From IMG/VR virus record IMGVR_UViG_3300030419_004471, positions 149,602 through 213,601 of that record: 64,000 nt of DNA; one strand, written 5' to 3'. The notes beneath the pieces were generated by a model. That model saw only the letters and a list, made by a program, of their open reading frames with translations, did not search any database and was not told the origin of the DNA. The translations under genes were made by a program, and so were the position numbers. The number at the start of each line of letters is the position of its first letter. Within the stretch, counting starts at the first letter, position 1. Of the stretch, positions 1,332 through 20,446 are shown piece after piece.

Positions 1332-2135
1332 TTACCAAAAAGTTTTCTCTCTATCTGAATCAGGTTCGTATGTAGTATGATGTACCACATCTGTATTATA
1401 ATCACTAGCTGATTTTGGATAAGGTTTTGTTTCGTGTTTTAATCTTTTTACCAAATCTCTCTTCTCTTTTTTACTCTGAGGTAGAATCTGAATGTATCTA
1501 TGTTTTGGTGGTTCTTCTCTTCTCCAGAACTCTTTATAACCTTGCTTACCGATTTCTTTTCTAAGGTGTTCTAAGTTACCACTACCCCATAAATTAAATA
1601 CACTTCTACTATGAATCCAATCATATGGGTCTTTACTTAATGAGATACCCCAATTAGGCATAAGAGCGATATCTGTTGATAATCCTTGATAAATCCAATT
1701 GGTAGCTTGATATATTCCTCCTAAGTGTTCTTGTCCATTATCAGCATAAGATAATAAAACTTTTATATTTTTATCATTATCTTTAATCCATTTAAATGTT
1801 TTTGCCAATGCATTAGATTCTATATTTGAACCATACCCATCATCAACATATAATCTAGTCAACTCTAAGATGTTATCTTTAGATAATCCCTCACAAACAG
1901 AAGTTGCTGCTTTTGCTCCTACTGGAAATCCATATATTGCACATCCTATTAGTTTATCTTTATTACCAAATACATCTTCTTCATCTAACTTATAGTAAAT
2001 ACCCAAAGCATATCTACACATAGTCCAAGCATGCGTATAATGCTTCTTTACTATAATATCCTTCGCTATGGATTTAGATATTTGTGCAACGTGCACTCTA
2101 CTAACATCACAATATTCTTTACCTTCTACTTTCAA
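1332..2135 (-). CDS. mom: Mom-family (GNAT-fold) DNA adenine modification enzyme, paralog 1
   Basis: LELTRL, LLSYAD...H.GGIYQATNWIYQG and C-terminal KHRY, as in phage Mu Mom. Confidence 0.8.
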   Translation of the reverse strand: MKVEGKEYCDVSRVHVAQISKSIAKDIIVKKHYTHAWTMCRYALGIYYKLDEEDVFGNKDKLIGCAIYGFPVGAKAATSVCEGLSKDNILELTRLYVDDGYGSNIESNALAKTFKWIKDNDKNIKVLLSYADNGQEHLGGIYQATNWIYQGLSTDIALMPNWGISLSKDPYDWIHSRSVFNLWGSGNLEHLRKEIGKQGYKEFWRREEPPKHRYIQILPQSKKEKRDLVKRLKHETKPYPKSASDYNTDVVHHTTYEPDSDREKTFW

Positions 2136-2880
2136 TTGGTTCTAATTTATGTATTTCTAATTCATCCGTATCATTATTCTTAGGATAAGTTTCTGATGGA
2201 TGTTTTAATGTTTTTAATATTTTCTTTCGTTCACCACCTTTACTCAGTATGTAAACGTATCTATGTTTTCTTGGTTCTTTACGAATCCAAAATGGTTTAT
2301 CAACTTTTTCTTGTATTTTCTTTGGGTCATTAGTTCCATAATATGGGAAGATAGTTCTACCATGCTGCCATTCACCATCTTCATTAAATTTAAAACTCCA
2401 ACTATCATTGTATCTAAGTGAGTTACCCTGATAAATCCAATTGGTAGCTTGATAAATTGTACCAGCGTGTCCTTCTTTTGGGTCTGAATATGATATTAAT
2501 CCTTTAATTTGTGGTGCGTTTTCTCTTAACCATTTAAAACTCTGTCCTATAAACCAACTTTCTATATTCGAACCATAATCATCAAATATAAAAACTCTAA
2601 CTAACTCTAATACTTCTGTTCTATCTAATAAAGGTGATATTGATTGTCCACTTAATCTTCCGATTGGGTCTCCATAACATATTACACCTATAAGTTTTTC
2701 TGATGAATTAAAAAATTGATGTGAATCATCTTCGATATATAATCCTAATGAATAGGATACTTTTGTCCAAAGATGTGAATAATGATTTTTAACTATAATA
2801 TCTTTAGCTACAGATTTGGAAATCTTTCTAATAGATAATTTTGATGTATCACAATATTGCTTCATAAACTTCCAGTCCAA
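2119..2880 (-). CDS. mom: Mom-family DNA adenine modification enzyme, paralog 2
   Basis: LELVRV, LISYSDPKEGHAGTIYQATNWIYQG, KHRY; clearly homologous to the neighbouring ORF. Confidence 0.8.
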   Translation of the reverse strand: MDWKFMKQYCDTSKLSIRKISKSVAKDIIVKNHYSHLWTKVSYSLGLYIEDDSHQFFNSSEKLIGVICYGDPIGRLSGQSISPLLDRTEVLELVRVFIFDDYGSNIESWFIGQSFKWLRENAPQIKGLISYSDPKEGHAGTIYQATNWIYQGNSLRYNDSWSFKFNEDGEWQHGRTIFPYYGTNDPKKIQEKVDKPFWIRKEPRKHRYVYILSKGGERKKILKTLKHPSETYPKNNDTDELEIHKLEPIESRR

Positions 2881-3065
2881 AACTCATTTAAATGTTGCCA
2901 AGTCTTGTTGGTTATGATTTTGTTTATGTTAGCTGGTGAGACTTTATTGTTACGAGCTATGATGGTTATATTTCTATGACCCATTCTCCATAACTTTCTT
3001 ATTTGTATAACCTGTTCATCCGTCAGTTTTGCTGATGGATGTGATTGGCCTCTTCTTATTGGCAT
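2862..3065 (-). CDS. stand-alone HTH DNA-binding module of the type found C-terminal in HNH homing endonucleases
   Basis: RGQSHPSAKLTDEQVIQIR...IARNNKVS...I...KTWQH pattern; no nuclease domain. Confidence 0.6.
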   Translation of the reverse strand: MPIRRGQSHPSAKLTDEQVIQIRKLWRMGHRNITIIARNNKVSPANINKIITNKTWQHLNEFWTGSL

Positions 3066-3329
3066 TTATAAATTTTCATTAATACTATTTGTGTACGCTA
3101 GCTCTGATTGCACTCCTACAAATCTATTTATTTCAACTCCATCCTTCTCTATTACTACTGTAGGAACTGACCTAACGTGGTATTTTTGAGCTTCTTCAAA
3201 TTGTTCGTCTATATTAATATACGAAAAATTTACCGAATTTCCAAATTTTTGATTAACTTTTTCTAAAATCGGTTTTAGAGCTTTGCAAGGTCCACACCAA
3301 GGGGCTTCGAATTTTTTAACTTCTATCAT
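3066..3329 (-). CDS. trxA: thioredoxin
   Basis: WCGPC active site, VPT cis-Pro motif; AGGAG 6 nt upstream. Confidence 0.95.
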   Translation of the reverse strand: MIEVKKFEAPWCGPCKALKPILEKVNQKFGNSVNFSYINIDEQFEEAQKYHVRSVPTVVIEKDGVEINRFVGVQSELAYTNSINENL

Positions 3330-3348
3330 TTTTTTCTCCTATTTAAAT

Positions 3349-5133
3349 TTAACCATCACACGCAACACAATCAGGGTCAACTGCTCTATCTGCAATATCA
3401 CCTCTGAGTACACTTTCCGTTCTCATATAATACAAAGTTTTTATACCTTGTTTCCACGCTTCCATTGTAACTTGATTAATCCACTTCGGTGTTGCAATCG
3501 AAGGGAACGCCAAATTTAATGATACGGATTGGTCAATATACTGCTGTCTAACACCAGCTTGCTTAACCAAATCCATTTGATTAATTTCTTTGAATGTTTT
3601 AAATACTTCTTTTACTGGATAAACCTTATCCCTATCTCCATTTTTAATATCTTTACATAATGTAAGTTTTCCATCTAAATAACACCATTTATCCAATTCT
3701 TTTAATGATTGAACAGAACCACCGTCATCCAATATTTTATCCCAAGTTTCCTTTTTATTTATACCAGCTTTTCTTAGTGCTTTTTCTAGCTCCCCATTCT
3801 TTCTAATAAATGTACCTTTAGAAGTTTGCTCAGTAAATACATTAGCTGCCCAAGGCTCAATACCTGGTGATACATTACCACTAAGTTTTGAATTACTAAC
3901 AGTTGGTGCAACTGCTCTTAAATGTGTATTTCTAAATCCACTTTCTCTACACCATAATGGTTCACCATATTCTTCTGCTAATTGTCTACTAGCTCTTTCT
4001 GATTCAATTTTTAATTGTGAAAATATTTTACGAGTTTCAAACTGAGCTTCCATACCTTCAAATGGAATACCTCTTTGTTGTAAGTAAGTGTGCCATCCTA
4101 AAACTCCTAATCCTAATGCTCTACCTTTTTCAGCAGATGCTACTGAATTTTCAAATCCTCTCATATTTTTAGCTTTCTGAATAAATTCTGAAAGTACTCC
4201 ATCTAAAAATATAGTTGCAGTATGAACTAAATCAGTATCTCTCCACTCATCATACTTTGCTAAGTTAAGTGAAGATAAACAACATACAAATGAATGATTC
4301 TCATCAGTATGTAAAGTGATTTCTGAACAGATATTAGTCATAAATACTTTTAATCCATTCTTTTTGTACATATCAGGATTACCTTTGTTTACATTACCTT
4401 TAAACATAATGTAAGGTTCACCTGTTGCTTTTCTTTTTTGTAATAATTTACCCCATTTTCTTCTTGCATCTTCATTACCATCTTGAAGTTTTCTCATAAA
4501 TTTATCACCAACGATTGCACATTGATGTAAATTAAGTGATTGTCTGTTTACATCACCTTTAGGTTCTCTTATCTCTAACCAATCTTCAAAATCATCGTGT
4601 TCAATGTTTAAGTTAACTGAAGCAGCTCCTCTTCTTACTGAACCTTGATTCGTAGCAAGAATTGTAGAATCATATATTTTTGCGAAAGGTACAACACCAT
4701 CTGATGTACCATTCATAGTAATTATAGAACCTGCTGGTCTAATTTGGTTAATACATATACCAACACCACCACCATGCTTTGCTAATAGCATTAATTCTAA
4801 ATTCTTTTTTCCAATCTCATAGATACTATCACCCACATCTATACCAAAGCAACTTATTGGTAATCCTCTATCTGTTCCAGTATTTGAAAGAACTGGTGTT
4901 GCTAAATTTAACCAACCTTTCCAGATGTAATCAAAGAACTTTGTTGCCATCTGAGGTTTGTTTAATCTTTGTGCAATACGAGTAGCTACTCTCCAATATG
5001 CATCTTTGGGTTTTTCACCAGGTAAAAGATACCCTTTTGAAATTGTTTTAACATATATTTCTGTATTTGCCCAAGATGGAAAATCTACATCAATTTCCCA
5101 TTCAAACTCTTCACCATAATTTTTTGCTGCCAT
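3349..5133 (-). CDS. nrdA: class Ia ribonucleotide reductase alpha subunit
   Basis: PISCF, TNICSEI, CCLSSLN, APTVSNS, TLYY and C-terminal CVAC motifs; short form without an obvious ATP cone. Confidence 0.95.
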   Translation of the reverse strand: MAAKNYGEEFEWEIDVDFPSWANTEIYVKTISKGYLLPGEKPKDAYWRVATRIAQRLNKPQMATKFFDYIWKGWLNLATPVLSNTGTDRGLPISCFGIDVGDSIYEIGKKNLELMLLAKHGGGVGICINQIRPAGSIITMNGTSDGVVPFAKIYDSTILATNQGSVRRGAASVNLNIEHDDFEDWLEIREPKGDVNRQSLNLHQCAIVGDKFMRKLQDGNEDARRKWGKLLQKRKATGEPYIMFKGNVNKGNPDMYKKNGLKVFMTNICSEITLHTDENHSFVCCLSSLNLAKYDEWRDTDLVHTATIFLDGVLSEFIQKAKNMRGFENSVASAEKGRALGLGVLGWHTYLQQRGIPFEGMEAQFETRKIFSQLKIESERASRQLAEEYGEPLWCRESGFRNTHLRAVAPTVSNSKLSGNVSPGIEPWAANVFTEQTSKGTFIRKNGELEKALRKAGINKKETWDKILDDGGSVQSLKELDKWCYLDGKLTLCKDIKNGDRDKVYPVKEVFKTFKEINQMDLVKQAGVRQQYIDQSVSLNLAFPSIATPKWINQVTMEAWKQGIKTLYYMRTESVLRGDIADRAVDPDCVACDG

Positions 5134-5134
5134 T

Positions 5135-5554
5135 TTATAATAATTTTATTTGTGATGAATCACCATAATTTCCAAATAATTCATCGTCTTTTTTAATATC
5201 TCTTAATGCTATTCCTGTATTGCTATCTATATTACCTTTTTCATACATAGTGTTTATCATAGCCAATGGTTCTGAAAATAAAAAATTAGTATCCTTTATC
5301 AATCTAAAACTGATATATGAATAATCATCATTTATTCTACTCCCATATGAACGTAACAAATATGCTAAAACTTCTTTAGGTAACTCCTTAGCTTCTTTAA
5401 ATCTTATTCTATACCATTTAGTTTTTCCTTCCCAATTTGGAAAAACCTGCTCTCCTTTCTTAATATCTACCAAAGCAAACAAACCAACACCGTGCACTTT
5501 GCTTGGTCTTTGATATGATTTTACACTCGTATTAAGATAATCAAATGGTTTCAT
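5135..5554 (-). CDS. SET-domain protein (putative lysine methyltransferase)
   Basis: PSKVHGVGLFALVDIKKGE and ALRDIKKDDELFGNYG motifs; NH motif degenerate (INTM). Start moved from 5620 to MKPFDY at 5554 to remove an 80-nt overlap. Confidence 0.75.
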   Translation of the reverse strand: MKPFDYLNTSVKSYQRPSKVHGVGLFALVDIKKGEQVFPNWEGKTKWYRIRFKEAKELPKEVLAYLLRSYGSRINDDYSYISFRLIKDTNFLFSEPLAMINTMYEKGNIDSNTGIALRDIKKDDELFGNYGDSSQIKLL

Positions 5555-6131
5555 ACTTTTTTCTTTTTTGAAAATCCCCATCGATAAAATAAGTCCAGTT
5601 ACAATTGTGTCCATCTTCAATTATTTTAGGATAATTCTCCCTGTGTGGAGAATTAATCTTAAACCAGTGAGAATGTAAATCTTTTGTATCTCTTATAGAA
5701 AAATAACTAAAAATTGATAAAACACAATTTTCATTTGCAACCATCTTTGCATAATCCTCAAACTTATTATAGTTTGAATCATCATAAGTATCCATAAAGA
5801 TACCATCAAATTTGATATCCAGCTCTGGTATTACATCTATCCAATCTCCAAAATGTATATGAACATTCTCTTTACCCTCAGCCCACTCTAGAGCTTTTGA
5901 ATAAATTTGTGGATTTGATTCGATACAATGATAGTTGCCAACTCTTTTATAAATGGCATCTGCACTATATCCAAGTCCAAATCCTACATCTAATACTTTA
6001 CCACCATTTTGTGTAACTATATTAGAATAAAATTCCATCAATTCTTTAGATACAATATCCATAACAATTGATGAATGGTCATCAGAATAATATATTCTGC
6101 TATCTGTTATTGTAACCTTTTTATTTTTCAA
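5541..6131 (-). CDS. class I SAM-dependent methyltransferase, Rmt2/guanidinoacetate-methyltransferase-like
   Basis: VM...LM...GGKVLDVGFGLG, HCIESNP, GDW, FDGIFMDTY follow the GAMT/Rmt2 pattern. Confidence 0.8.
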   Translation of the reverse strand: MKNKKVTITDSRIYYSDDHSSIVMDIVSKELMEFYSNIVTQNGGKVLDVGFGLGYSADAIYKRVGNYHCIESNPQIYSKALEWAEGKENVHIHFGDWIDVIPELDIKFDGIFMDTYDDSNYNKFEDYAKMVANENCVLSIFSYFSIRDTKDLHSHWFKINSPHRENYPKIIEDGHNCNWTYFIDGDFQKRKKYETI

Positions 6132-6136
6132 TTTTT

Positions 6137-7132
6137 TTAAAATAAATCATCCCAATCTTCTCCCTCATTAGCTTTACTATAATCAGTAGGTCTAATAGCG
6201 AAAAAATCGGTATGAGTGTGTCCACCTGTCAAATGATAAAACCAATCTAAATTATCAGCTTTCTTCTTATCGAATTCAAAGATACCTTTGTATCCTAGTT
6301 CTTCTAATTTAGTATTGGTTCGTTGTTTAATAAACTCTTTTAAATCATCTGCTTTTAAATTTTCCAAATCACCCATCTCAAACATTTTATCAATAAATTT
6401 AAGTTCGAGTTCAACGATTAATTTAGCGGCTTCAGTAATACTCTTTTTACATTGTTTTAATAAGTCTGGATATTCATCACACATATGTCTGAATAATACA
6501 CATCCCATTTTAGAATGTAAAGATTCATCTCGTACTGACCATTTCATTTGCTGACCAATACCTTTGAGTTTATTTCTCATTTGAAATGAATATAGAACAG
6601 CGAATGAAGAATACAAAGAAACTCCTTCAGCAAATGCAGAAAAGATAGCTAAACTTCTACCTACTTCTTGTCTTGCTTTTTCATTTTTTTGTAAATCTTC
6701 ATGTGTCCAATCTGCAGAGGTTTCTGTGAGTAATTCAAATTTTTCCGCTACTGCTGGTTCGTGTAGAAAAGCTTCGAAGTTTTCCAATCCTAATGTTTCA
6801 TTTAGATATGAATATGCAGTTGCATGAATGGTTTCTTGTGAACCAAACATCATTGCCATTTGTCTTATCTCATGCTTAGGAAACCATTTAGTAACCATAT
6901 TAGTCCAATAATCTGAAACTGCACATTCTGTTTGTGCAAATCCCAATAGAATATTACCAACTAAGTTTTTTTCTTCCTTAGTTAAGGTTTCATTCCAATC
7001 CTTGACATCCATTTGCATGGGTATCTCGGTGTGAAGCCAAAATGCTTGTGCTTGTTTTAACCAGCCTTCATTATAATATATTGGATATTCGAATGGTTTG
7101 AACGGAATTCGTTCTTTGAATAGTTTACTCAT
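6137..7132 (-). CDS. nrdB: ribonucleotide reductase beta subunit
   Basis: Di-iron ligands (QTE, ETIH, AEG, DESLH); C-terminal DFF...WDDLF. Confidence 0.95.
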   Translation of the reverse strand: MSKLFKERIPFKPFEYPIYYNEGWLKQAQAFWLHTEIPMQMDVKDWNETLTKEEKNLVGNILLGFAQTECAVSDYWTNMVTKWFPKHEIRQMAMMFGSQETIHATAYSYLNETLGLENFEAFLHEPAVAEKFELLTETSADWTHEDLQKNEKARQEVGRSLAIFSAFAEGVSLYSSFAVLYSFQMRNKLKGIGQQMKWSVRDESLHSKMGCVLFRHMCDEYPDLLKQCKKSITEAAKLIVELELKFIDKMFEMGDLENLKADDLKEFIKQRTNTKLEELGYKGIFEFDKKKADNLDWFYHLTGGHTHTDFFAIRPTDYSKANEGEDWDDLF

Positions 7133-7145
7133 TTTTTTATAACCT

Positions 7146-7316
7146 TTATTTGTTTTCCTCTACAGACGCTTTTCTATAATCTGTAACTAATTTTTTAATT
7201 TCACCAATAGCTTTTCTTGCTCTTGATTTAGCTGCTTTTGATGTTCCATTGTGTTCTAATTCGAATTGTGTGTACAATTCTTTAATTTGTTCGAAAAGTT
7301 CCTGTGATTTTGCCAT
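7146..7316 (-). CDS. histone H1-like Hc1-family small basic protein (56 aa)
   Basis: Manually read MAKSQELFEQIKELYTQFELEHNGTSKAAKSRARKAIGEIKKLVTDYRKASVEENK; KAA.SRARKA..EIKKL...YRK helical-hairpin pattern; AGGAG 9 nt upstream. Confidence 0.7.
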   Translation of the reverse strand: MAKSQELFEQIKELYTQFELEHNGTSKAAKSRARKAIGEIKKLVTDYRKASVEENK

Positions 7317-7410
7317 AATTTATTTCTCCTTTTAATTTAAGTTCGGTGAATATAACTATTGTATATATTTAAAAAAATTCACCAATGTTATTTATTTTTG
7401 TAACTTTTTT

Positions 7411-9504: not shown

Positions 9505-9505
9505 A

Positions 9506-10456
9506 TTATTTGTTTATCGTTGATAAAATGTTTAGTATCGTAGCCATAAAGGGTATTTCCTTATCGACTGCTAAAGCATCTCTATGTTGACCTTCTGCTA
9601 ATACCAAAATTACTCCACTAACCTTACCTGAAGCATATTCATCTACCTTTTCATAGAGTACTGAATACATTTCTGTAAAATCTTGCATTTTAGAATCCGC
9701 AACCATCTGCCTTATTTTCATATATTTATTCCTACTATCATCTGATGATTTAAGAATATCTAATATTTTAGTTTTGAAATCAGAATCCATCAAATCATTT
9801 TTAGAAAGTTTTAACTCACCCTTAACAGAATTAAGTTGACAAGTATTTATTACTTTTCTTATATCAGGATATGATGAATCTATGATAGGAACTAAATCCT
9901 TTACATCATATTTTATTTCTTCGGAACTAAGTATCTTATCTAATTGTACTGCAACTTCTTTTTTAGAAGGTGGTACAATTTGGAATGTTTGACATCTACT
10001 TTGAATTGGGTCAATTATCTTCTCAACATAATTACAGGTCAAAATAAACCTACAATGTTTTGAAAATGTTTCCATAAGATTTCTTAATATAGCTTGTGCA
10101 TTTGGAGTCATATAATCAAACTCATCCAATATAACAATCTTATATTTCTTAAATCCTTGTGATGATGCAAAGTTCTTAACTTTATTTCTAACTGTATCTA
10201 CATTGTTTTCATCAGATGCATTTATAATCATATAATCACATTCAATTGATTTAACAATGAGTTTAGCCAAAGTTGTTTTACCAGTACCAGCTTTACCAAA
10301 AAGTAAAAGGTGTGGAACATCTGATGTTTCCAAATATCCTGCAACCTTTTCCTTTAGATGTTCATTACCAACATAATCATCTAATTTTACGGGTCTATAT
10401 TTCTCTACCCATAATGAATTATCTATTGTTTCTTCTGTTTGTTCGAAAAATCCCAT
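9506..10456 (-). CDS. clamp loader large subunit (RFC/T4 gp44-like AAA+)
   Basis: WVEKYRP, GKAGTGKTT, ILDEFD, SRC. Confidence 0.95.
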   Translation of the reverse strand: MGFFEQTEETIDNSLWVEKYRPVKLDDYVGNEHLKEKVAGYLETSDVPHLLLFGKAGTGKTTLAKLIVKSIECDYMIINASDENNVDTVRNKVKNFASSQGFKKYKIVILDEFDYMTPNAQAILRNLMETFSKHCRFILTCNYVEKIIDPIQSRCQTFQIVPPSKKEVAVQLDKILSSEEIKYDVKDLVPIIDSSYPDIRKVINTCQLNSVKGELKLSKNDLMDSDFKTKILDILKSSDDSRNKYMKIRQMVADSKMQDFTEMYSVLYEKVDEYASGKVSGVILVLAEGQHRDALAVDKEIPFMATILNILSTINK

Positions 10457-10457
10457 A

Positions 10458-11678
10458 TTATCTTCCTACTTCTTTTAAATAATTGTTTTTCATTGTTTCC
10501 CAATCCATACCAATAGCATCTATATAAAATAAATGTTCTGGTTTCAATCGATTAGAATCATATAACTTTGTATATCTTTTTATGGCTTGTCTTTTCCACC
10601 ACTTATTAATGTAATCAACTCCCTCTTCAAACTTCTTTTTCATCTTTAAATCTTTTTCTTCAATTTCTGAACGAAGAAATTCTGGTCCGTTTTCATACAT
10701 CATAGCAAGATACACTCCTCTTTTGAATCCGTGATGGTAATCAGCTGCTCTGATACCACATTCTTTAAAGATTCTTCCTAAAATCTTTTGTTTAATACCA
10801 CTAACAGGTCCTTGTCGTTGAGATTCAGCTCCATACATATTAGCTCCGTTTCTTTTTCTTTCTTCTGTAATATGTTCTTTATACCAATCCTCTCTGTTTT
10901 CTTTTAACCATTGGTGCCACGGGTCATAAAATTTATCATCAGGTTTAATTGCTATCTTACCAGCAGATTCCCCTAATGTTTTAAAATGTGGAATACCATT
11001 ATATTGAGAATGAATACCATATAAAGAAGTTGTACCAACACCAATTAGAGTTTGTCCATATTTCTTTTTCCAAAAATCTCTAATTTCAGGTACAGTAGTC
11101 ATCATCGCTGTAAGTTTACCACCTAAGAAATTATATCCTAATGGTTGTGTACATACTATCGTAGAAGCGATTGTTGTATAATTTAACTTACCCTTTTTAA
11201 ACTTATCTTCTTTATTCCATCCTATGTATTTATCTCTAACACCCATCGATGTAACATCAGATGCTAAAGATATCATACCCAGCAATTTACCACTTTTCTT
11301 ATCCTTAACAAAAACTTTAACATTTCTACCAGGGTTAGCTGTCCAACTCATTGTATGAATCATCTTTCTAAGATGTGTCCATTTTGTAGCTTCTTTAGTA
11401 TCTTCTACAATTTCAACGTATGGTTCTAACTCTTCAATTTCTTTTATTGTAAGTTCTTTATCATTAATATCTGTAGGTCTCCATTGCCAATCATAATAAG
11501 ATGCTATAGCAGATTTATCTCTAATCATAGAATCTCCTTGCAACTCTACCCACTTTTTATATAAAGTTTGTTCCTCTACAGACATCTGCATAAGATAGTC
11601 CATATTCTCAATGAGCTTTTTCTTCTCATCTTCGAATACAAATTGAGGTTTAGCTGGTTCGGTATCCCAAAAACTCAT
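10458..11678 (-). CDS. DUF4338 (DruA-like) protein, possible DNA-modifying GNAT-like enzyme
   Basis: PGR, LASDV, QPLGYNFLGGKL, TTSLYG...SQY motifs typical of DUF4338. Confidence 0.7.
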   Translation of the reverse strand: MSFWDTEPAKPQFVFEDEKKKLIENMDYLMQMSVEEQTLYKKWVELQGDSMIRDKSAIASYYDWQWRPTDINDKELTIKEIEELEPYVEIVEDTKEATKWTHLRKMIHTMSWTANPGRNVKVFVKDKKSGKLLGMISLASDVTSMGVRDKYIGWNKEDKFKKGKLNYTTIASTIVCTQPLGYNFLGGKLTAMMTTVPEIRDFWKKKYGQTLIGVGTTSLYGIHSQYNGIPHFKTLGESAGKIAIKPDDKFYDPWHQWLKENREDWYKEHITEERKRNGANMYGAESQRQGPVSGIKQKILGRIFKECGIRAADYHHGFKRGVYLAMMYENGPEFLRSEIEEKDLKMKKKFEEGVDYINKWWKRQAIKRYTKLYDSNRLKPEHLFYIDAIGMDWETMKNNYLKEVGR

Positions 11679-12373
11679 TACTTAATCTCTACTAAATAAT
11701 AATTTGATGTATAATCTCCGTCCTCAAATGAAAGATGTGCTAATCCTTTAGATGAAATTTTTAATGAAGATGATTTTGAACCTTTGTTAGCTATAAGAAT
11801 AGCTTTTAGATATTTAGCTGAAAATGCTATAGGTTTTATATCATTATCACATTTACAATTAACATCAATACTAATTCTATTTGAATTAATTGATGAATAA
11901 CCTAAAATGATTTCACCTTTGTTTTTTGTACAAGTAAAAGTAAATGTATCTGCATCTGCTAATGCTCCTTTTGATTTGATAAATTTATTTACAAACTCAT
12001 CATCTAATGTTACCTCAGAATCAAATTCAGGTAATGCCTTTAAATCAGGTACAGCAGGTATAACAGATGGAGCAGCTAGCATATATTGTACTTTCGTACC
12101 CTTATCACTAAATTTAAGAGCTCCTGTTACCTCTTCTACTTTTATTGATGAATCTAATACACTTAACAATCCTCTCAATTGAGAAGTTGTATAAATACCA
12201 AATTCACCACTAGGAAACTCACTATCTTTCACAGATACGTTTCCTAATAATGTCTTATCATCAGAAATCATTCTGACTGACATTGAATCATCAGTAGAGT
12301 TCATCATTACTGATTCAACCTCGCCACCGAGATTATATCGATTTATGAACCCATCTAATTTTAATTTTTCCAT
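11678..12373 (-). CDS. DNA sliding clamp (T4 gp45-like)
   Basis: FGIY...LRGLL and FSAKYLK motifs, 231 aa, adjacent to the clamp loader. Confidence 0.85.
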   Translation of the reverse strand: MEKLKLDGFINRYNLGGEVESVMMNSTDDSMSVRMISDDKTLLGNVSVKDSEFPSGEFGIYTTSQLRGLLSVLDSSIKVEEVTGALKFSDKGTKVQYMLAAPSVIPAVPDLKALPEFDSEVTLDDEFVNKFIKSKGALADADTFTFTCTKNKGEIILGYSSINSNRISIDVNCKCDNDIKPIAFSAKYLKAILIANKGSKSSSLKISSKGLAHLSFEDGDYTSNYYLVEIK

Positions 12374-12404
12374 AATTATCCTTTTATTAATTTATTTATT
12401 GTTA

Positions 12405-12436
12405 CAAATATACGAAAAATTCCTGAGAAATCCAAA
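12405..12436 (-). promoter_or_regulatory. Bacteroidota sigma70-type promoter (sliding clamp operon)
   Basis: TTTG-N20-TATATTTG; near-identical to the 1296 copy. Confidence 0.85.
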
Positions 12437-14842: not shown

Positions 14843-14855
14843 TTAGTTTTTAATA

Positions 14856-15683
14856 TTATTTGTTAAACAAATCATCAAATGCAGCCGCAACATCATCAGT
14901 TTTCTTAGATGTTTTTGGTTTATCATCAGTATCAAATGGTAAATCATCAACTTCTTTTTCTGATTTAACCTCTTTGTTTGATAATGTTTCCTCAGCTACT
15001 GAAGGTTCACCATCTTCATTTTTATCTGAAGTTGGATTTAACCATCCTTCTAATACTGCTTTTAATTCATCATAAGATAATTCTGAATATAAATCAGTAA
15101 TTTCAGTTTGAGTTTCTAAAAATTTAGTAACATCTTCAGCTTTATCAGATAATGCACTTTGATTTGGTTTAACTCTAATAGTTGTAACAGGATATGAAGT
15201 TCCTGCTTCTTCGGCAGATTGGTATTCTATAGTAATATCTCTACCCGTTTTAGGGTCTGTTATATCACCATAATCTGGGTCTGCTATATATCCAAGAATT
15301 TCTTGATATACAGTTTTACCGAATCCCCAAAATTTGATTCCTTCTCCTTCTTGTCCTCTCACTAAAATAGGAACGAAAGTTCTTAATTTCGGCTCCATCT
15401 GCTTAGCAGCTTTCCAATCTTCCTTATCACCCATTCTTTTCAATCTATCAGCAAACTCAACTATAGGGTCAGGTCTACCAAATGATTGTGGTGAGAGATA
15501 AGTTTTATTATTAATGTTGTAGTGAAAATACAATTCGATGAAAGGATTATCTTTTTCGAATTTGTAGGGAACGATTCTGACTTGATGTTTACCAGGTGTT
15601 GGTTTCCATAGATTGTCAGACTTCTTTTGTGTGTTTTGTAGTTTGTTCAGTCTACCTCTGATTGCGTCAATATTAATTGCCAT
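14856..15683 (-). CDS. single-stranded DNA binding protein (T4 gp32-like)
   Basis: VRIVP, FWGFGKTVY, DITD...GRD; acidic tail ending FDDLFNK. Confidence 0.85.
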   Translation of the reverse strand: MAINIDAIRGRLNKLQNTQKKSDNLWKPTPGKHQVRIVPYKFEKDNPFIELYFHYNINNKTYLSPQSFGRPDPIVEFADRLKRMGDKEDWKAAKQMEPKLRTFVPILVRGQEGEGIKFWGFGKTVYQEILGYIADPDYGDITDPKTGRDITIEYQSAEEAGTSYPVTTIRVKPNQSALSDKAEDVTKFLETQTEITDLYSELSYDELKAVLEGWLNPTSDKNEDGEPSVAEETLSNKEVKSEKEVDDLPFDTDDKPKTSKKTDDVAAAFDDLFNK

Positions 15684-15814
15684 AATTTACTCCTTTTAAG
15701 TGTTAATATAATTTTAAATTTTACAGTTTAGTTTGAGATGCGTTTCTTACATCCGGTGTATATATAAATATAACAAACTTCCAAAAACCACCGATATTTT
15801 TAGAGTTTTTTTAA

Positions 15815-16159
15815 CTATTTTGCCCACTTTTTTCGGTTAACAATTTGAGAGATAACACCATAGACTGAAAGGTCTTGATATGTATCTTCTATTGCTTCAC
15901 CAACCTCATCAGGTTGACCTTTTACAACCAATTGTTTTAACCTCTGAATCTTATCGTTTTTTCTAAACCAAAGACCAGTAAGCGCAACGTTAATATCATC
16001 CGATGATTCCAATACTGAACCTACTGATATATTATCAGGTCCATAATTTCTTTGTTTCTTACAAAATGTATCGTACATCTCATCTAATATTTTTTTAAAT
16101 TCTTGAGTTGTTGCTGGAAATTTATCCTCACAATACTCAATCGCAGTTTGTTTTTTCAT
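15815..16159 (-). CDS. nucleotide-modification-associated domain 1 (DUF1599) protein
   Basis: KKQRNYG, R.NDKIQRL, IEDTYQDLSVYG pattern. Confidence 0.75.
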   Translation of the reverse strand: MKKQTAIEYCEDKFPATTQEFKKILDEMYDTFCKKQRNYGPDNISVGSVLESSDDINVALTGLWFRKNDKIQRLKQLVVKGQPDEVGEAIEDTYQDLSVYGVISQIVNRKKWAK

Positions 16160-16179
16160 ATAATATAACTTTATTTCTA

Positions 16180-16211
16180 CTAATATACAAAAAATTTTTC
16201 ACATTTCCAAA
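16180..16211 (-). promoter_or_regulatory. Bacteroidota sigma70-type promoter (DUF1599 gene)
   Basis: TTTG-N20-TATATTAG. Confidence 0.75.
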
Positions 16212-18725
16212 TTAAAATGAAAAAAACTTTTCAGCTGTTTTTGTTGAGGATAAAACCTCACCCCATTTCATAGCCCCATAAAAATCCTCTAACTTCTTTA
16301 AAAGTTCTCTTTCAAAGATTTTATCATAATCAATATAGGTCTTTACTAAATCCATAATTTCCTTTGGGTCATCATATCCTTTGAATGCTACTCCATCTAA
16401 TCCCATTGGATTTTGTTTAAGATACACCCATTTAACCTTATCACCATTTTTCATAGGTTCATATTTCATCTCACATTTAAAATGAGATAATAGTTGATTA
16501 AATGCTATAGCTGCTTTTACGTGAGCTGGTGTGCCTGATACAAATTGGAACATTCTGATTTGTTTACCCTTTGGAAGATATTTTGTTAAATTCTTTACAG
16601 ATGTATTTTTTGCAATATCTACAACATTCATCTGAGATAAATTATTTTTGAAATCATAAATCTTATCAGTAAGTTCAGTTTCCGTTTTACCTTTTAGAAT
16701 ATCAATTAGAACTTCACTCATAAACTTTCTAAATGCCGCTGGATAAGATGACCTAACAACATCTAAGCCCTTTACATCTAATTTATTAACAGATACACCA
16801 TTATCAGATATAATCCATTGTGCGTATCGTTTTTTAGCTATCCAAATACCTGATTTAGAAACATATTCTTTTTTAATCTCAAATCTATGTTTATCAATAT
16901 TGAAAATTCTTTTTGCAAGTATATCATAAAAATCATTTAGATAATCTTGCATTTCTCCTGCTATTCCATTTACGAAACCAGCGATATCATCATCAGAATT
17001 ATCTCTCCAAGTTGGGTTTCTACTATCAAGTAAGGGAGTAGCACTAAAAAAAACGGAATCAGTGTCAATGTATATATTACTATCCAAATCGGGATTACCC
17101 AATTCTTTATTGTACCTGATGTTAGCCATGTCAGCAGTTGACTTAATAACTGTCTGTCCTGTCGTGGTAACAGCGGTAGCATTATCAACATCATAAAACC
17201 TAAAGGCAGGAAGGCCAAGCACCCCATATAAAGAATTAAGTAGAATTTTTTGTACCAATTGACGTTTTTTATACCATTCATATTTTTCATTATCTCCGCT
17301 TTTTCCATATTGTTTCATTTTATTTTTGAACTCAACTCTTTGATTAAACCAAATATCTAAGATATCAGGTATACAACCAACAGTATCAGTTCTATATAAT
17401 ACACCATTAGATGCAACTGAAAATTTTGAATTATCTAAATACTTTTTAAGATTTTCTTTTGTAATCGTATCTTCACCGATTGTATAAGTATCCTTACCAC
17501 CCTTTACAAACTCATTCGCATCCCAATCATTAATCTTACCAATCTTAGTTTCTGGTGAGATATTAATACTCATAATAATAGATGGATATAGAGAAGTTAA
17601 ATCTAAATCATAAATCCATTCATATTTTCCAACGATAGGTGCTTTTACATATGCTCCGATAAACTTCTCCTCATTGTTATCTCTTAATGCTTGCATTCTC
17701 TCCTGTCTATCAGCTGGTTTATTTGGTGCTACGATACCTTTTCTTTTCAAATAACATAACAATGCTCCTTCTAAGTATTTTGATGAATAAACAAAATCTT
17801 CGTATGGAACGTGACCTGCATGACAAATACCTCTTGCCGTATCGATGAATTGTAACTTCTTATCCATATCAACTACCAACTCAACATCCACTAAGTTATA
17901 CTCAATAAACTTCTCTATATCATCTCTAAATAATTGGTCTAAGTTTCCTTGATATTCTACCTTACCTCTACCTAACTCTTTTGATGCAATACTATCTAAA
18001 CGATAATTGTCTAATTCTGTATAAGTAAAGTTTTTGTAAAGTGCTAAATAATCTAAATAAGATACACCAGCCATAAAGAATCTCTTACGATAAGGTGACC
18101 AGAAACATTCACCGATTGGTGATAATCTATTTGCGTTTCTTTTACCTATAACATTTTTTATTCTATTATAAAGATATGGTGTATCAAAGTAATCTATATT
18201 CCATCCAGTAACAATAGTTGGATTAATATATTCATATAGTTCTAAATATTTTTCTAATAATTCTGCTTCACTTCTAAATGGTAGTACAATAGCTTTATCA
18301 GTTTTCTTATTTGATAAAACATTATCTTTATCTAAAACCAAAACATAATATTGATTGGTAGCTGAATCATGCAATGCTATAGAAGTAATTTCATTCTTAG
18401 CTTCTTGCATATCAGGTAAACCTGTTTCCATCTCTACCTCAATATCATATGTAAGAGTTATATGCCCTTCTGATGGTAAATCCGAATCAGTATATGTATC
18501 TACTAAAACTCTAGTCGTTTCTGCAACATCTGATTCAAAAAGATTAGGATTATCTTTATTGAATTTATATATCTTAGTTAACCTATCTCCATACAAAGAT
18601 ACACACTCACCATTTTCTGCTTTTTCATATGCATATCTTGTATAAGGGAAAGTTCTGTAACCTAATTTATCATCCCATAAGTGTATGAGATTCTTCTGTC
18701 TTTGGTAATATACGTTTTGGTACAT
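16212..18725 (-). CDS. family B DNA polymerase (T4 gp43-like)
   Basis: Exo DIEVE; pol motifs DLTSLYPSI, KILLNSLYG, YIDTDS, KKRYA. Confidence 0.97.
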   Translation of the reverse strand: MYQNVYYQRQKNLIHLWDDKLGYRTFPYTRYAYEKAENGECVSLYGDRLTKIYKFNKDNPNLFESDVAETTRVLVDTYTDSDLPSEGHITLTYDIEVEMETGLPDMQEAKNEITSIALHDSATNQYYVLVLDKDNVLSNKKTDKAIVLPFRSEAELLEKYLELYEYINPTIVTGWNIDYFDTPYLYNRIKNVIGKRNANRLSPIGECFWSPYRKRFFMAGVSYLDYLALYKNFTYTELDNYRLDSIASKELGRGKVEYQGNLDQLFRDDIEKFIEYNLVDVELVVDMDKKLQFIDTARGICHAGHVPYEDFVYSSKYLEGALLCYLKRKGIVAPNKPADRQERMQALRDNNEEKFIGAYVKAPIVGKYEWIYDLDLTSLYPSIIMSINISPETKIGKINDWDANEFVKGGKDTYTIGEDTITKENLKKYLDNSKFSVASNGVLYRTDTVGCIPDILDIWFNQRVEFKNKMKQYGKSGDNEKYEWYKKRQLVQKILLNSLYGVLGLPAFRFYDVDNATAVTTTGQTVIKSTADMANIRYNKELGNPDLDSNIYIDTDSVFFSATPLLDSRNPTWRDNSDDDIAGFVNGIAGEMQDYLNDFYDILAKRIFNIDKHRFEIKKEYVSKSGIWIAKKRYAQWIISDNGVSVNKLDVKGLDVVRSSYPAAFRKFMSEVLIDILKGKTETELTDKIYDFKNNLSQMNVVDIAKNTSVKNLTKYLPKGKQIRMFQFVSGTPAHVKAAIAFNQLLSHFKCEMKYEPMKNGDKVKWVYLKQNPMGLDGVAFKGYDDPKEIMDLVKTYIDYDKIFERELLKKLEDFYGAMKWGEVLSSTKTAEKFFSF

Positions 18726-19855
18726 TAACTATTTAATTGTTTATGAAGTTCTTTAATCATTTTATCTTCGTTATTGGATAATTGTTTAGCTCTTTCGATT
18801 GAACGAAGTTCTTGTGTAAATCTAAATATATCATCATCCAACATTTTATCTAACATTTCAAAGAAATCTTTCTTTTTTGTGAAAAATAATCCATCTGGGT
18901 CTATTTCTCTATAACATAAAGAATCTTGAAATATCATTGGAGTACCATTCATCATACAATCAGTACCACTAACACTCCAACCATAATTTGTTTGTCTCAT
19001 CTGTACACCAACTTTACAATTTTGTAATCTTTCGTAGTATTCATGCTTTGGAACTTTTGTATTATCAATCCAAGATTCACTTGGTTTACCTTTAAGTTGT
19101 GGCACCCATAAAACAAAATCATCTCTTTGTTTTCTATATTCCTTCATAAGTTTTAAAAACGCAGGCCATCCTTTGTAACCAGCAGCCCTATGATTGAATA
19201 CAATAACATTTCTTTTTTCGTTTGAAGGTTTTTCAACTATAAATTCTTTTGGTAATCCTAAATTCCATACTGTAAGAATATCATCTAATTTATTTACAAA
19301 TTCTTCAGTAAATGTTTCTTTAGCTTCTTCTAATACTCTATTCTTTTGGTCTTGTGTATTTAAATAACAAGTATCCATTTGAGATACTCCTAATAATTCT
19401 ATAGGTAACCACATCCATTTTGCTTTACCCGGCCTTCTATCTGCTCCATTTGCCGATTTCATTTCCCACCAATGACAATAACCAATTATTTTTGTATCCA
19501 TATTCTTTTTATATCTACCAGTCTGAACCCAATCTGGTAAATGAGAATATATTACATCATAATCTATGTCTTTTGATAATTTTATTAAATCTAATGGAGG
19601 GAATGCTCTTTGATTCATCATATCACCACTAAATGGTGCAATATGTTGTTTTACATTTTCTAAATTAAGTTTTCTTACTGGTTTTGGTAATATTACATTC
19701 CAAAAGTAATCACCTAATTTATCCAATGCAATAATATGGTTGTATAAAACATCCACAAATGAATCTTTTTCAATACTACCAGCATTCGTGATATTTGGTA
19801 TCACCAACACTTTTCTAGCATCTTTGTAATCTATTTTAGTTTCCCAAAAACTCAT
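18725..19855 (-). CDS. GT-B glycosyltransferase, translationally coupled to the DNA polymerase
   Basis: IVFNHR, YGWSVSGTDCMMNGTPMIF (GT4-like region); 1-nt overlap with the pol start. Confidence 0.75.
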   Translation of the reverse strand: MSFWETKIDYKDARKVLVIPNITNAGSIEKDSFVDVLYNHIIALDKLGDYFWNVILPKPVRKLNLENVKQHIAPFSGDMMNQRAFPPLDLIKLSKDIDYDVIYSHLPDWVQTGRYKKNMDTKIIGYCHWWEMKSANGADRRPGKAKWMWLPIELLGVSQMDTCYLNTQDQKNRVLEEAKETFTEEFVNKLDDILTVWNLGLPKEFIVEKPSNEKRNVIVFNHRAAGYKGWPAFLKLMKEYRKQRDDFVLWVPQLKGKPSESWIDNTKVPKHEYYERLQNCKVGVQMRQTNYGWSVSGTDCMMNGTPMIFQDSLCYREIDPDGLFFTKKKDFFEMLDKMLDDDIFRFTQELRSIERAKQLSNNEDKMIKELHKQLNS

Positions 19856-19864
19856 TATCTCTAT

Positions 19865-20371
19865 TTAGTGTATTTGGATTCCATTCTCATATATTTCTTT
19901 AGTTTGTAGGTGAGCTGCTAATCTTGGGTCTTTACCTTTATTCTTCTTCTTAAATTGTTTTTTTAGTTTTGGTAAAAGTAAATTATAAACAGTATCTCCA
20001 TCCAATTTCCATATCTCTGCTATTGGATTGCTTGGGTCTGTAGTAAATCTAGCAATATAATGGTTTTTATATTTTTTAATTTTTTCTTTTTTTAAATAAT
20101 CATTTTGTTCTTTCCAAGTATTAAATACGGAAATTCCAGAATATGCAGCTTTTATTTTATCAGCTGTTGTTGATTTATATTCACAATCTCCATCGGAGTC
20201 TATCCCATCAGCTCCACTCAATGTTTCCGCCACTTTATGACCAAGTTTAATTGCTATCAAAATCTCTCTACTTCGTGCATAAGAAAATGGGTCTCCCCAA
20301 TTTCCTTCTTTACAAGCCTCCATCATAAGATTCCAAGCTTTTGAATATTTTTGTTCTGGTGTTATACGCAT
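19865..20371 (-). CDS. PvuII-like PD-(D/E)XK restriction-type endonuclease (putative)
   Basis: GADGIDSDGDCEYKS resembles the recalled PvuII catalytic segment GNDAVDNAGQEYELKS; similar size and C-terminus (ENGIQIH vs EHGTKIY). Confidence 0.6.
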   Translation of the reverse strand: MRITPEQKYSKAWNLMMEACKEGNWGDPFSYARSREILIAIKLGHKVAETLSGADGIDSDGDCEYKSTTADKIKAAYSGISVFNTWKEQNDYLKKEKIKKYKNHYIARFTTDPSNPIAEIWKLDGDTVYNLLLPKLKKQFKKKNKGKDPRLAAHLQTKEIYENGIQIH

Positions 20372-20390
20372 ATTTTAGGGTTTTATGTTA

Positions 20391-20422: not shown

Positions 20423-20446
20423 GAAAAAGTGAAGTTTTTTTCAGTT

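What the first reader, a model, noticed from the sequence alone, without database searches (positions are those of the whole stretch)
1332..20371. Replisome-embedded DNA modification plus restriction system
Candidate modifiers are threaded through the core replication operons. The GT-B gene overlaps the PolB start by 1 nt, DUF1599 follows PolB, DUF4338 sits between clamp and clamp loader (1-nt overlap), and two Mom genes lie downstream. A PvuII-like nuclease heads the GT-PolB transcript. This parallels T4 (modify own DNA, cut unmodified host DNA), but no hydroxymethylase or thymidylate synthase is visible here, so the chemistry may be a new adenine acylation/glycosylation scheme.
Basis: inference. 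Interest (0 to 1): 0.75.

Follow-up and report, generated by a model that had tools for sequence, protein, structure and literature searches.

The report
Replisome-embedded Mom/GT/DruA DNA-modification module
An abundant uncultured marine T4-like phage has a conserved set of likely DNA-modifying enzymes (two Mom adenine modifiers, a glycosyltransferase and a Mom-like "DruA" acyltransferase) built into its DNA-replication operons, whereas the neighbouring PvuII-like nuclease is a strain-variable add-on that has lost its usual methyltransferase partner and is not part of that set.

Summary
All the named genes exist at the stated coordinates on the minus strand, and the 1-nt overlaps (GT/PolB, clamp/DruA) are real.

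The restriction half does not hold as a system. The 168-aa protein really is PvuII-like in fold and keeps its catalytic motif. However, it is absent from all 80 related loci and from three complete relatives. Its coverage collapses in four other marine metagenomes. In other phages it is usually paired with a small DNA methyltransferase, which this genome lacks.

The genome has a canonical thymidylate synthase outside the window, and DUF1599 is not specific to the module. No modified base has been observed, so the chemistry is unknown.

The parts
2862..3065 (-). o67: a 67-aa helix-turn-helix protein that sits immediately upstream of the Mom genes
   Evidence: Upstream neighbour of MomA in 29 loci and of MomB in 11 loci, out of 43 orthologs. 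Weak match to the DNA-binding C-terminus of HNH endonuclease PHROGs, E 1.7e-4. About half of the orthologs carry ...NEFWSGS near the C-terminus.
2119..2880 (-). MomA: Mom-family GNAT, predicted aminoacyl-tRNA-dependent adenine-N6 modifier
   Evidence: PF25680 156.9 bits. phmmer to Mu Mom 8bv8 E 2e-13 over chain positions 29-232. Keeps the equivalents of H58, Y59, R111, S124, D149 and Y159; R151 is Lys. A MomA-type gene is present in 35 of the 54 loci that contain a Mom gene.
1332..2135 (-). MomB: second Mom-family paralog, present in every Mom-bearing relative
   Evidence: PF25680 155.8 bits. Mu Mom E 1.9e-5. Keeps H58, Y59, R111, S124, D149 and Y159; R151 is Gly. C-terminal [FY]W in 54 of 54 orthologs. 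Apparent TTG start that overlaps the end of MomA by 17 nt.
18725..19855 (-). GT-B (GT4-like) glycosyltransferase; its stop overlaps the PolB start by 1 nt
   Evidence: Sub-threshold PF13439 and PF00534 hits. Atlas feature score 0.98 to GT4 clusters, and structure TM 0.75-0.82 between the nearest cluster's model and bacterial GT4. PolB is its downstream neighbour in 61 of 80 loci. N-terminal M-x-F-W-[EDG] in 75 of 79 orthologs. No homolog in 50,697 cultured-phage records.
10458..11678 (-). DruA/DUF4338-family Mom-like GNAT between the clamp and clamp loader gp44 (1-nt overlap upstream, 1-nt gap downstream)
16212..18725 (-). Family B DNA polymerase (gp43-like) with a C-terminal ...KFFSF tail
   Evidence: PF00136 and PF03104. 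C-terminal FF-x-F in 56 of 58 orthologs.
11678..12373 (-). Sliding clamp (gp45-like)
   Evidence: phrog_223, DNA polymerase processivity factor, E 4e-13. Syntenic with the clamp gene in relatives.
9506..10456 (-). Clamp loader large subunit (gp44-like); N-terminus MGFFEQTE
   Evidence: AAA and DNA_pol3_delta2. An N-terminal F[FW][EDQ] motif occurs in only 18 of 54 orthologs.
19865..20371 (-). PvuII-like PD-(D/E)XK nuclease: a strain-variable cassette in the slot upstream of GT, without a methyltransferase partner
   Evidence: Foldseek top 12 hits are PvuII. D55, D58, E64 and K66 are invariant in 36 homologs. Absent from the 80 GT loci and from 3 complete or near-complete relatives. A methyltransferase is the +1 neighbour in about 60 of 67 other phage loci. 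No such methyltransferase in this genome. Metagenome depth falls to 0-6 against 10-24 on the flanks.
15815..16159 (-). DUF1599 (NMAD1) small helical protein; conserved, but not specific to the module
   Evidence: PF07659 at 21.8 bits, below the cut-off. phrog_1485. Atlas. Present in Mel-JY01, which lacks Mom. Its position varies between relatives.

Best explanation
Proposed mechanism: the core feature is a post-replicative DNA hypermodification module that is wired, by translational coupling, into the replication operons of a clade of uncultured marine T4-like myoviruses.

Shown here:
- The module consists of o67 (a small HTH protein), one to three Mom-family enzymes, a GT-B glycosyltransferase and a DruA/DUF4338 GNAT whose nearest solved structure is Mu Mom.
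- These genes stay together, and stay next to PolB, the clamp and the clamp loader, through several genome rearrangements.
- In distant relatives they are more conserved than the replisome proteins around them.

Inferred from the established Mu Mom mechanism:
- MomA and MomB transfer an aminoacyl group from charged tRNA to adenine N6 in double-stranded DNA. The group then rearranges to a carbamoylmethyl-type adduct.
- Because Mu Mom is an obligate dimer, MomA and MomB may act as a heterodimer where both are present.
- Arg151 of Mu Mom is replaced by Lys in MomA and by Gly in MomB. This leaves room for a different donor or sequence context.

Inferred from context only:
- The GT and the DruA-type GNAT elaborate the same adduct or another base.
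- GT, DruA and MomB are recruited to newly made DNA through their conserved terminal F-W peptides, in the way the polymerase uses its FFSF tail on the sliding clamp.

The PvuII-like nuclease is a separate, strain-variable cassette inserted into the hypervariable slot upstream of GT. It came from an ordinary phage nuclease-methyltransferase pair and has lost the methyltransferase. If it is active, this strain must be protected from it either by the module's modification or because its recognition site is absent.
For: Gene identities.

Synteny over 80 loci:
- The canonical order plus three alternative arrangements keep GT and DruA adjacent to each other and/or to Mom and replisome genes.

Conservation in relatives with PolB below 70% identity:
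- MomA 71, MomB 67, GT 69, DruA 69.
- PolB 58, clamp 60, gp44 61, gp41 44.

Mom:
- Catalytic residues retained (read against PMC13219725).
- The tRNA-dependent Mom mechanism and the obligate dimer are described in PMC13219725.

DruA:
- DUF4338 is described as a GNAT in PMC10853773.
- DruA relatives occur fused to ParB_N and UDG domains.
- A DruA-like gene sits directly after clamp loader gp44 in the cultured cyanophage S-PRM1.

Terminal FW motifs:
- GT 75/79, DruA 61/61, MomB 54/54, PolB FFxF 56/58. GT and DruA are the only two of 261 ORFs that start this way.

Other routes:
- Canonical ThyA, and no match to four DNA methyltransferase families. A TET/JBP search also found nothing, but it had no positive control.

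PvuII-like gene as an accessory cassette.
Against: - No modified base has been observed. Everything about the chemistry and about the targets of GT and DruA is inference.
- The GT has only sub-threshold Pfam hits and no homolog in cultured phages. GT4 enzymes usually act on sugars, lipids or proteins.
- DruA-like genes occur without Mom or GT in cyanophages, pelagiphages and a temperate-phage-like contig. DruA may therefore have an independent role.
- Strong depletion of GATC, CATG, CTAG and GGTACC shows that the DNA is not generally protected from restriction, at least at those sites.
- The clamp-docking reading of the FW motif has no direct support. A search for internal controls among other ORFs with terminal aromatic residues was uninformative, and cultured-phage DruA-likes lack the motif.
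Confidence: 0.6

Rival explanations
1. One reading: a coupled modification-restriction system like T4's. The phage modifies its own DNA with Mom, GT and DruA, and the PvuII-like nuclease at the head of the GT-PolB operon destroys unmodified host or competitor DNA.
For: - PvuII-like fold with an intact, invariant D...E-x-K motif.
- It lies 9 nt upstream of GT on the same strand.
- It has lost the methyltransferase that accompanies it in about 60 of 67 other phage loci. The genome matches none of four DNA methyltransferase families, so some other form of self-protection is needed.
- PMC7824862 describes Mom domains fused to REase domains in jumbo phages.
- Other occupants of the same slot include GmrSD_N/NsnA-like proteins.
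Against: - Absent from 80 of 80 related loci and from 3 of 3 complete or near-complete relatives that keep Mom, GT and DruA.
- In two relatives that have it, it lies about 50 kb from the module.
- Its depth falls to 0-6 against 10-24 in four other metagenomes of the same phage population.
- Self-protection could equally come from absence of its recognition site.
Confidence: 0.15
2. The genes are co-located with replication genes only because they share early or middle timing. They act on targets other than DNA: the GT on host envelope or phage or host proteins, and the DruA-type GNAT on a protein or on aminoacyl-tRNA (as TacT/AtaT-type GNAT toxins do), for host takeover. Only the Mom genes would modify DNA.
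For: - The nearest named relatives of the GT are bacterial GT4 cell-wall-type enzymes.
- Generic GNATs score almost as well as Mom against the DruA model, and hhalign is not significant.
- DruA-likes occur without Mom or GT in cultured phages.
- Restriction-site avoidance implies incomplete protection of the DNA.
Against: - GT and DruA remain adjacent to each other or to Mom in three independent rearrangements.
- DruA relatives are fused to the DNA-associated domains ParB_N and UDG.
- GT, DruA and MomB share a terminal FW motif.
- DruA is translationally coupled between the clamp and the clamp loader.
Confidence: 0.2
3. The PvuII-like gene is a selfish or competition cassette. It would act as a homing-type or superinfection-exclusion nuclease that moves between phage genomes, with no functional link to the neighbouring GT.
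For: - 422 viral homologs lie in many unrelated contexts.
- At least 10 unrelated families occupy the same slot.
- It varies at strain level.
Against: It normally travels with a methyltransferase, as a classical R-M pair. Its loss of that partner here still needs an explanation.
Confidence: 0.5

Closest known systems
Phage Mu Mom (tRNA-Gly-dependent N6-carbamoylmethyl-adenine synthesis; PMC13219725; PDB 8bv8)
   Same: - MomA and MomB are clear PF25680 members.
- They keep the equivalents of H58, Y59, R111, S124, D149 and Y159.
- The expected reaction is post-replicative modification of adenine in double-stranded DNA.
   Different: - The genes occur as a tandem pair of paralogs (about 44% identical by tblastn cross-hits) in a lytic T4-like phage.
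- The essential Arg151 is replaced by Lys (MomA) or Gly (MomB).
- An HTH protein (o67) lies upstream, instead of the Com zinc finger.
- The genes are linked to a GT-B and a DruA-type GNAT and are embedded in replication operons.
- MomB has a conserved C-terminal FW.
DruA (DUF4338) of Druantia type I anti-phage defence
   Same: Same Pfam and PADLOC family, with a GNAT core.
   Different: - It is encoded by a phage, between the clamp and the clamp loader.
- No MZB/DUF1998 (PF09369) match, the domain of DruE/YprA-type helicases, was found in the genome, and the flanking genes are replisome genes rather than DruB-E.
- It has an N-terminal FW peptide.
- It is extremely conserved: 77-90% identity among the top 120 clusters.
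T4 hydroxymethylcytosine glucosylation combined with host-DNA nucleases
   Same: The general logic of a lytic myovirus carrying DNA-modification enzymes near its replication genes.
   Different: - No dCMP hydroxymethylase was found. The only thymidylate synthase family gene is a canonical ThyA.
- The GT is GT4-like and gives no hit to the T4 alpha- or beta-glucosyltransferase families.
- The nuclease is not conserved together with the modifiers.
PvuII and phage-borne type II R-M pairs
   Same: Fold, size and the PD-(D/E)XK motif. Homologs in other phages sit next to NPPF-motif or N6_N4 methyltransferases.
   Different: - There is no Pfam PF09225 hit at E 0.01 or better.
- From memory of the PvuII sequence, its DNA-contact residues do not appear to be conserved, so the specificity is probably not CAGCTG. 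That site is not depleted (71 observed vs 61 expected).
- The methyltransferase partner is missing.
DruA-like genes of cultured marine myophages (Synechococcus phage S-PRM1 and 24 other Synechococcus records; Pelagibacter phages Mosig and HTVC008M)
   Same: Same family. In S-PRM1 the gene directly follows clamp loader gp44.
   Different: - No GT homolog exists in any cultured phage.
- No Synechococcus or Pelagibacter record appears among the rows and organism groups shown for the MomB search.
- They lack the N-terminal FW motif.
- They are only 24-32% identical.

Membership tests
Mom family (PF25680) | Profile score above Pfam's gathering cut-off over the full domain | tested here: met
   156.9 and 155.8 bits against a cut-off of 27.1, covering profile positions 2-202 of 202.
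Mom family (PF25680) | Residues required for Mu Mom activity (R111, S124, D149, R151) plus H58, Y59 and Y159 | tested here: inconclusive
   Six of the seven are conserved in both paralogs. R151 is Lys in MomA and Gly in MomB (chain index +9 gives the residue number; residue roles from PMC13219725).
Mom family (PF25680) | Aminoacyl-tRNA-dependent modification of adenine N6 in dsDNA | not testable with these tools
   Needs an enzyme assay or nucleoside mass spectrometry.
DruA / DUF4338 (PF14236) | Profile score above the gathering cut-off | tested here: met
   73.3 bits against a cut-off of 27. PADLOC DruA E 1.4e-19.
Druantia type I defence system | DruA encoded together with DruB-DruE, including a DUF1998-type helicase | tested here: not met
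   The neighbours are the clamp and the clamp loader. There is no PF09369 match in the genome.
Type II restriction-modification (PvuII-like) | PvuII fold with the PD-(D/E)XK catalytic motif | tested here: met
   The top 12 Foldseek hits are PvuII. D55, D58, E64 and K66 are invariant.
Type II restriction-modification (PvuII-like) | A cognate DNA methyltransferase in the same genome | tested here: not met
   No homolog of the partner methyltransferases. No PF01555, PF02086, PF05869 or PF00145 match.
Type II restriction-modification (PvuII-like) | Sequence membership in Pfam Endonuc-PvuII (PF09225) | tested here: not met
   No Pfam hit at E 0.01 or better. One homolog, P0119, has a precomputed PF09225 hit.
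T4-type modify-and-restrict strategy | Synthesis of a modified pyrimidine nucleotide (hydroxymethylase) | tested here: not met
   The only thymidylate synthase family gene is a ThyA equivalog, 344.9 bits against a cut-off of 327. No ThyX.
T4-type modify-and-restrict strategy | A nuclease conserved together with the modification genes | tested here: not met
   The PvuII-like gene is absent from 80 loci and from 3 complete or near-complete relatives.
GT-B glycosyltransferase (GT4-like) | Profile or fold match to the GT4/GT1 families | tested here: inconclusive
   Pfam hits are below the cut-offs. Atlas feature score is 0.98, and the nearest cluster's model aligns to bacterial GT4 models at TM 0.75-0.82. 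The window protein itself was not folded.
GT-B glycosyltransferase (GT4-like) | DNA as the acceptor | not testable with these tools
   Only gene context bears on this.
DUF1599 / NMAD1 (PF07659) | Profile score above the gathering cut-off | tested here: inconclusive
   21.8 bits against a cut-off of 25. 79 of 100 atlas hits are DUF1599 clusters.

The most novel reading that the evidence does not exclude
A clamp-tethered, multi-enzyme pathway builds a new hypermodified adenine on nascent DNA in abundant marine myoviruses. Mom paralogs would install an aminoacyl-derived N6 adduct from charged tRNA. The DruA-type Mom-like GNAT and the GT-B would then extend it, for example by glycosylating the adduct's amide or a side-chain hydroxyl. 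All three would be docked on the sliding clamp through terminal F-W peptides. This would also give the first biochemical role for the DruA family of Druantia defence.
Probability: 0.2. Interest if true: 0.85.

Novelty: new variant of a known kind. Interest (0 to 1): 0.66.

Why it matters
- Mom's tRNA-dependent chemistry was only established in 2026 (PMC13219725). Here Mom paralogs with an altered essential residue are hard-wired to a glycosyltransferase and a second Mom-like acyltransferase, in phages that recur in seawater metagenomes worldwide. This is a concrete lead to a new kind of DNA base modification.
- No function was assigned to DruA in any paper the searches returned. A Mom-like fold, fusions to ParB and UDG domains, and a conserved position beside the clamp and clamp loader all point to a nucleic-acid-modifying role. 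That idea can be tested directly.
- If the shared terminal FW peptides bind the clamp, this would be an example of DNA-modifying enzymes recruited by the replisome in a virus.
- The work also corrects a published annotation: by sequence, the "mom" of cyanophage S-SCSM2R belongs to the DruA family.

Tried and rejected
- Sequence searches of the PvuII-like, GT, DruA and DUF1599 proteins against PDB chains gave nothing.
- A megablast of the region against cultured phages gave nothing.
- hhalign of the DruA and Mom profiles was not significant.
- Inferring the nuclease's recognition site from palindrome depletion failed. GATC depletion is clade-wide, and it also occurs in Mel-JY01 and Mosig, which lack the nuclease context. 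Phages carrying the nuclease-methyltransferase pair deplete different sites (AGCT, CATG).
- The promoter and terminator scan found fewer promoter-like sites than shuffled sequence, so 'heads the transcript' could not be tested. No RNA run holds the phage.
- The neighbourhoods of distant DruA homologs and of the fusion proteins lay on contigs too short to be informative.
- A search for internal controls for a clamp-binding motif, among other ORFs with terminal aromatic residues, found no recognisable gp33- or gp55-type clients.
- A first literature search for 'DruA' matched 'Druantia' by word start and was useless.
- o67 was considered as a Com-like zinc finger and rejected: it has no cysteine motif and looks like an HTH protein.

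Full report
**Context.** The window is the last 64 kb of a 213.6 kb IMG/VR virus record that CheckV rates as complete. The genome has 31% G+C, and 252 of its 261 non-overlapping ORFs lie on one strand. Its PolB is 53% identical to that of Microcystis phage Mel-JY01, and 30-34% identical to those of Synechococcus and Pelagibacter T4-like myophages. Near-identical sequence recurs in marine and seawater metagenomes from 2014 to 2025.

- Two Mom genes lie at 2119-2880 and 1332-2135 (PF25680, E about 1e-46).
- A DruA/DUF4338 gene lies at 10458-11678 (E 2.4e-20).
- PolB lies at 16212-18725.
- A glycosyltransferase lies at 18725-19855. It has only sub-threshold Pfam GT4/GT1 hits, but the atlas search places it with GT4-type GT-B enzymes.
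- A small DUF1599-like ORF lies at 15815-16159. It is below the Pfam cut-off but is supported by PHROG and atlas results.
- The clamp (phrog_223) and clamp loader gp44 flank DruA.

The junctions are as described. GT and PolB share one base, and so do the clamp and DruA (both TAATG). DruA and gp44 are separated by 1 nt, and the 168-aa ORF ends 9 nt before GT.

The 'PvuII-like' label could not be confirmed by sequence. A confident model (pLDDT 93.7) does confirm it: its twelve best PDB matches are all PvuII, followed by Eco15I-N and NhoI. D55, D58, E64 and K66 are invariant in 36 homologs.

**The conserved unit.** A scan of viral contigs with the GT returned 166 relatives. I mapped all the window's proteins onto the best 80 loci.

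The commonest order is RNR small - RNR large - thioredoxin - o67 - MomA - MomB - [variable slot] - GT - PolB - clamp - DruA - gp44 - Zn-ribbon - gp62. Three other arrangements exist:

- Mom-DruA-GT-PolB-clamp-gp44
- PolB-clamp-DruA-GT-gp44
- clamp-GT-DruA(-DruA)-gp44

In each of these, GT and DruA become direct neighbours while still touching replisome genes.

PolB follows GT in 61 of 80 loci. The clamp precedes DruA in 53 cases. The small HTH protein o67 precedes Mom in 40 of 43 cases. A MomB-type gene is present in every locus that reaches that region (54 loci), and a MomA-type gene is present in 35 of them.

In relatives whose PolB is below 70% identical, mean identities are:

| Protein | Mean identity (%) |
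|---|---|
| MomA | 71 |
| MomB | 67 |
| GT | 69 |
| DruA | 69 |
| PolB | 58 |
| clamp | 60 |
| gp44 | 61 |
| gp41 | 44 |

Mel-JY01, the closest cultured relative, has PolB-clamp-gp44 with no GT or DruA at these positions, and it has no Mom anywhere. Repeated re-association after rearrangement, together with this conservation, is the main evidence that Mom, GT and DruA form one functional module embedded in the replication genes.

**What the parts are.**

*Mom.* Mu Mom has recently been shown to transfer glycine from Gly-tRNA(Gly) to adenine N6 in dsDNA. The glycyl group then rearranges on the base to N6-carbamoylmethyl-dA. Mom is an obligate dimer, and R111, S124, D149 and R151 are required for activity (PMC13219725). 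When aligned to the Mom crystal chain (index +9 gives the residue number), both window paralogs keep H58, Y59, R111, S124, D149 and Y159. R151 is Lys in MomA and Gly in MomB.

*GT.* The GT has no homolog in 50,697 cultured-phage records.

**A shared terminal motif.** The counts across the clade are:

| Protein | Motif | Orthologs with it |
|---|---|---|
| GT | N-terminal M-x-F-W-(E/D/G) | 75 of 79 |
| DruA | N-terminal M-x-F-W-(D/E)-(T/A)-E | 61 of 61 |
| MomB | ends in (F/Y)-W | 54 of 54 |
| PolB | ends in F-F-x-F | 56 of 58 |
| gp44 | N-terminal F-[FW]-[EDQ] | 18 of 54 |

About half of the o67 orthologs carry NEFW near the C-terminus. Of the 261 ORFs in the genome, only GT and DruA start this way.

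From established knowledge of T4-type polymerases, their C-terminal aromatic tail binds the sliding clamp. I therefore propose that these peptides dock the modifiers on the clamp. This is inference only. An attempt to find internal controls failed, and cultured-phage DruA-likes lack the motif.

**The nuclease.** The PvuII-like gene is not part of the module.

- It is absent from all 80 GT loci and from three complete or near-complete clade genomes that keep Mom, GT and DruA.
- In two relatives that do have it, it lies about 50 kb from the module.
- Contigs from four independent marine metagenomes cover GT and PolB at 10-24x with only 3-7 differences over the longest GT-PolB contigs. Depth falls to 0-6x across 19804-20304, contigs break at both gene boundaries, and they continue into other sequence. 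The tool warns that gaps in contigs are not proof of absence.
- In relatives, the slot between Mom and GT holds at least ten unrelated families: GmrSD_N/NsnA-like proteins, a GHKL ATPase and a common 425-aa family of unknown function. In six loci it is empty.
- Elsewhere, 422 viral homologs of the nuclease exist. In 55 of 67 analysed loci the next gene is a 185-aa protein with an NPPF motif and weak adenine-methylase hits, and in several others it is an N6_N4 methylase. These are ordinary R-M pairs.
- This genome has neither partner and matches none of four DNA methyltransferase families.

The nuclease here has therefore lost its methyltransferase partner. Whether the Mom-type modification protects the genome from it, or its site is simply absent, is open.

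**Other routes.** The genome has a canonical thymidylate synthase (NCBIfam equivalog, above its cut-off) and no ThyX. A TET/JBP search also found nothing, but it had no positive control. Pyrimidine hypermodification is therefore not indicated.

DUF1599 is conserved but changes position between relatives, and it occurs in Mel-JY01, which has no Mom.

GATC is almost absent: 5 observed against 786 expected. CATG, CTAG and GGTACC are also depleted. The GATC depletion is clade-wide, and it also occurs in Mel-JY01 and Mosig but not in S-PRM1. It is therefore independent of the module, and it shows that the DNA is not generally immune to restriction.

**Verdict.** The modification half stands, as a well-supported inference without any chemical data. 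The restriction half describes a strain-specific accessory cassette, not a system. I rate this a new variant of a known kind (Mom-type phage DNA hypermodification). Its new features are the partners (a GT-B and a DruA-type Mom-like GNAT), the translational coupling to PolB and to the clamp and clamp loader, and a shared terminal motif.

Noticed in passing
Whole genome (one of the five sites is in the window, at 55605); clade loci L004-L083: GATC is almost absent: 5 observed against 786 expected, z -34. CATG (139 vs 642), CTAG (192 vs 489) and GGTACC (1 vs 34) are also depleted. The GATC depletion is clade-wide (O/E 0.03 over 1.17 Mb). It also occurs in the Mel-JY01 and Mosig loci but not in S-PRM1, so it is independent of Mom/GT/DruA and probably reflects host restriction.
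   Followed up: partly
window 18725-19855, 10458-11678, 1332-2135, 16212-18725, 9506-10456, 2862-3065: Conserved terminal aromatic peptides: an N-terminal M-x-F-W-acidic motif in GT and DruA, a C-terminal F/Y-W in MomB, an FFxF tail in PolB, MGFFEQ at the gp44 N-terminus, and NEFW near the o67 C-terminus. These may be clamp-docking motifs.
   Followed up: partly
window 5135-5620 and 5541-6131: A SET-domain ORF and a small SAM-dependent methyltransferase ORF (PCMT/Methyltransf_25-like) are wedged between the two ribonucleotide reductase subunit genes. As called, the two ORFs overlap by 80 nt. Both are rare in relatives: SET in 3 loci and the methyltransferase in 1.
   Followed up: no
window 7146-7316: A 56-aa Hc1 histone H1-like protein (PF07432, E 5e-10) lies between the gp41 helicase and the RNR small subunit. 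It is conserved in 22 related loci at 70-93% identity.
   Followed up: no
window 19800-22500: A hypervariable island. Metagenome contig depth collapses over the PvuII-like gene and over the 674-aa ORF of unknown function (20900-22924) in four independent marine runs, while the flanking genes stay covered.
   Followed up: partly
window 22937-25943: Just upstream of the finding lie a non-specific DNA/RNA endonuclease (Endonuclease_NS, E 8e-29), a radical SAM protein (412 aa, twitch/SPASM-like) and an HNH endonuclease (357 aa). The non-specific nuclease is a better candidate for host-DNA degradation than the PvuII-like gene, and some relatives share it.
   Followed up: no
PQ898602.1 (Synechococcus phage S-SCSM2R) 134000-134773, hit H47: The gene published as 'methylcarbamoylase mom' in this cyanophage is matched by the DruA query (24.8% identity, E 4e-12). 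It belongs to the DruA/DUF4338 family, not to PF25680 Mom.
   Followed up: partly
window 2119-2135: MomB has no ATG near its start. The ORF begins at a TTG that overlaps the end of MomA by 17 nt. MomA's listed TTG start is probably replaced by the ATG five codons downstream.
   Followed up: no
L067 and L068, 3833-7844: In these relatives PolB is split into ORFs of 1007 aa and 286 aa with extra inserted sequence. This may be an intein or another insertion.
   Followed up: no
Genome positions 77143-93366 (outside the window): The phage encodes tRNA-Glu(ttc), tRNA-Ala(tgc) and tRNA-Cys(gca) but no tRNA-Gly. This is of possible relevance because Mom enzymes use charged tRNA as the donor.
   Followed up: no
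L010, L039, L042, L073 and L017 (the slot between Mom and GT): In relatives, the slot that holds the PvuII-like gene here carries GmrSD_N/NsnA-like proteins or a GHKL ATPase. In 22 loci it carries a 425-aa family with a weak ParB_N/GmrSD_N lead from the atlas. This suggests a hotspot for conflict genes next to the modification genes.
   Followed up: partly
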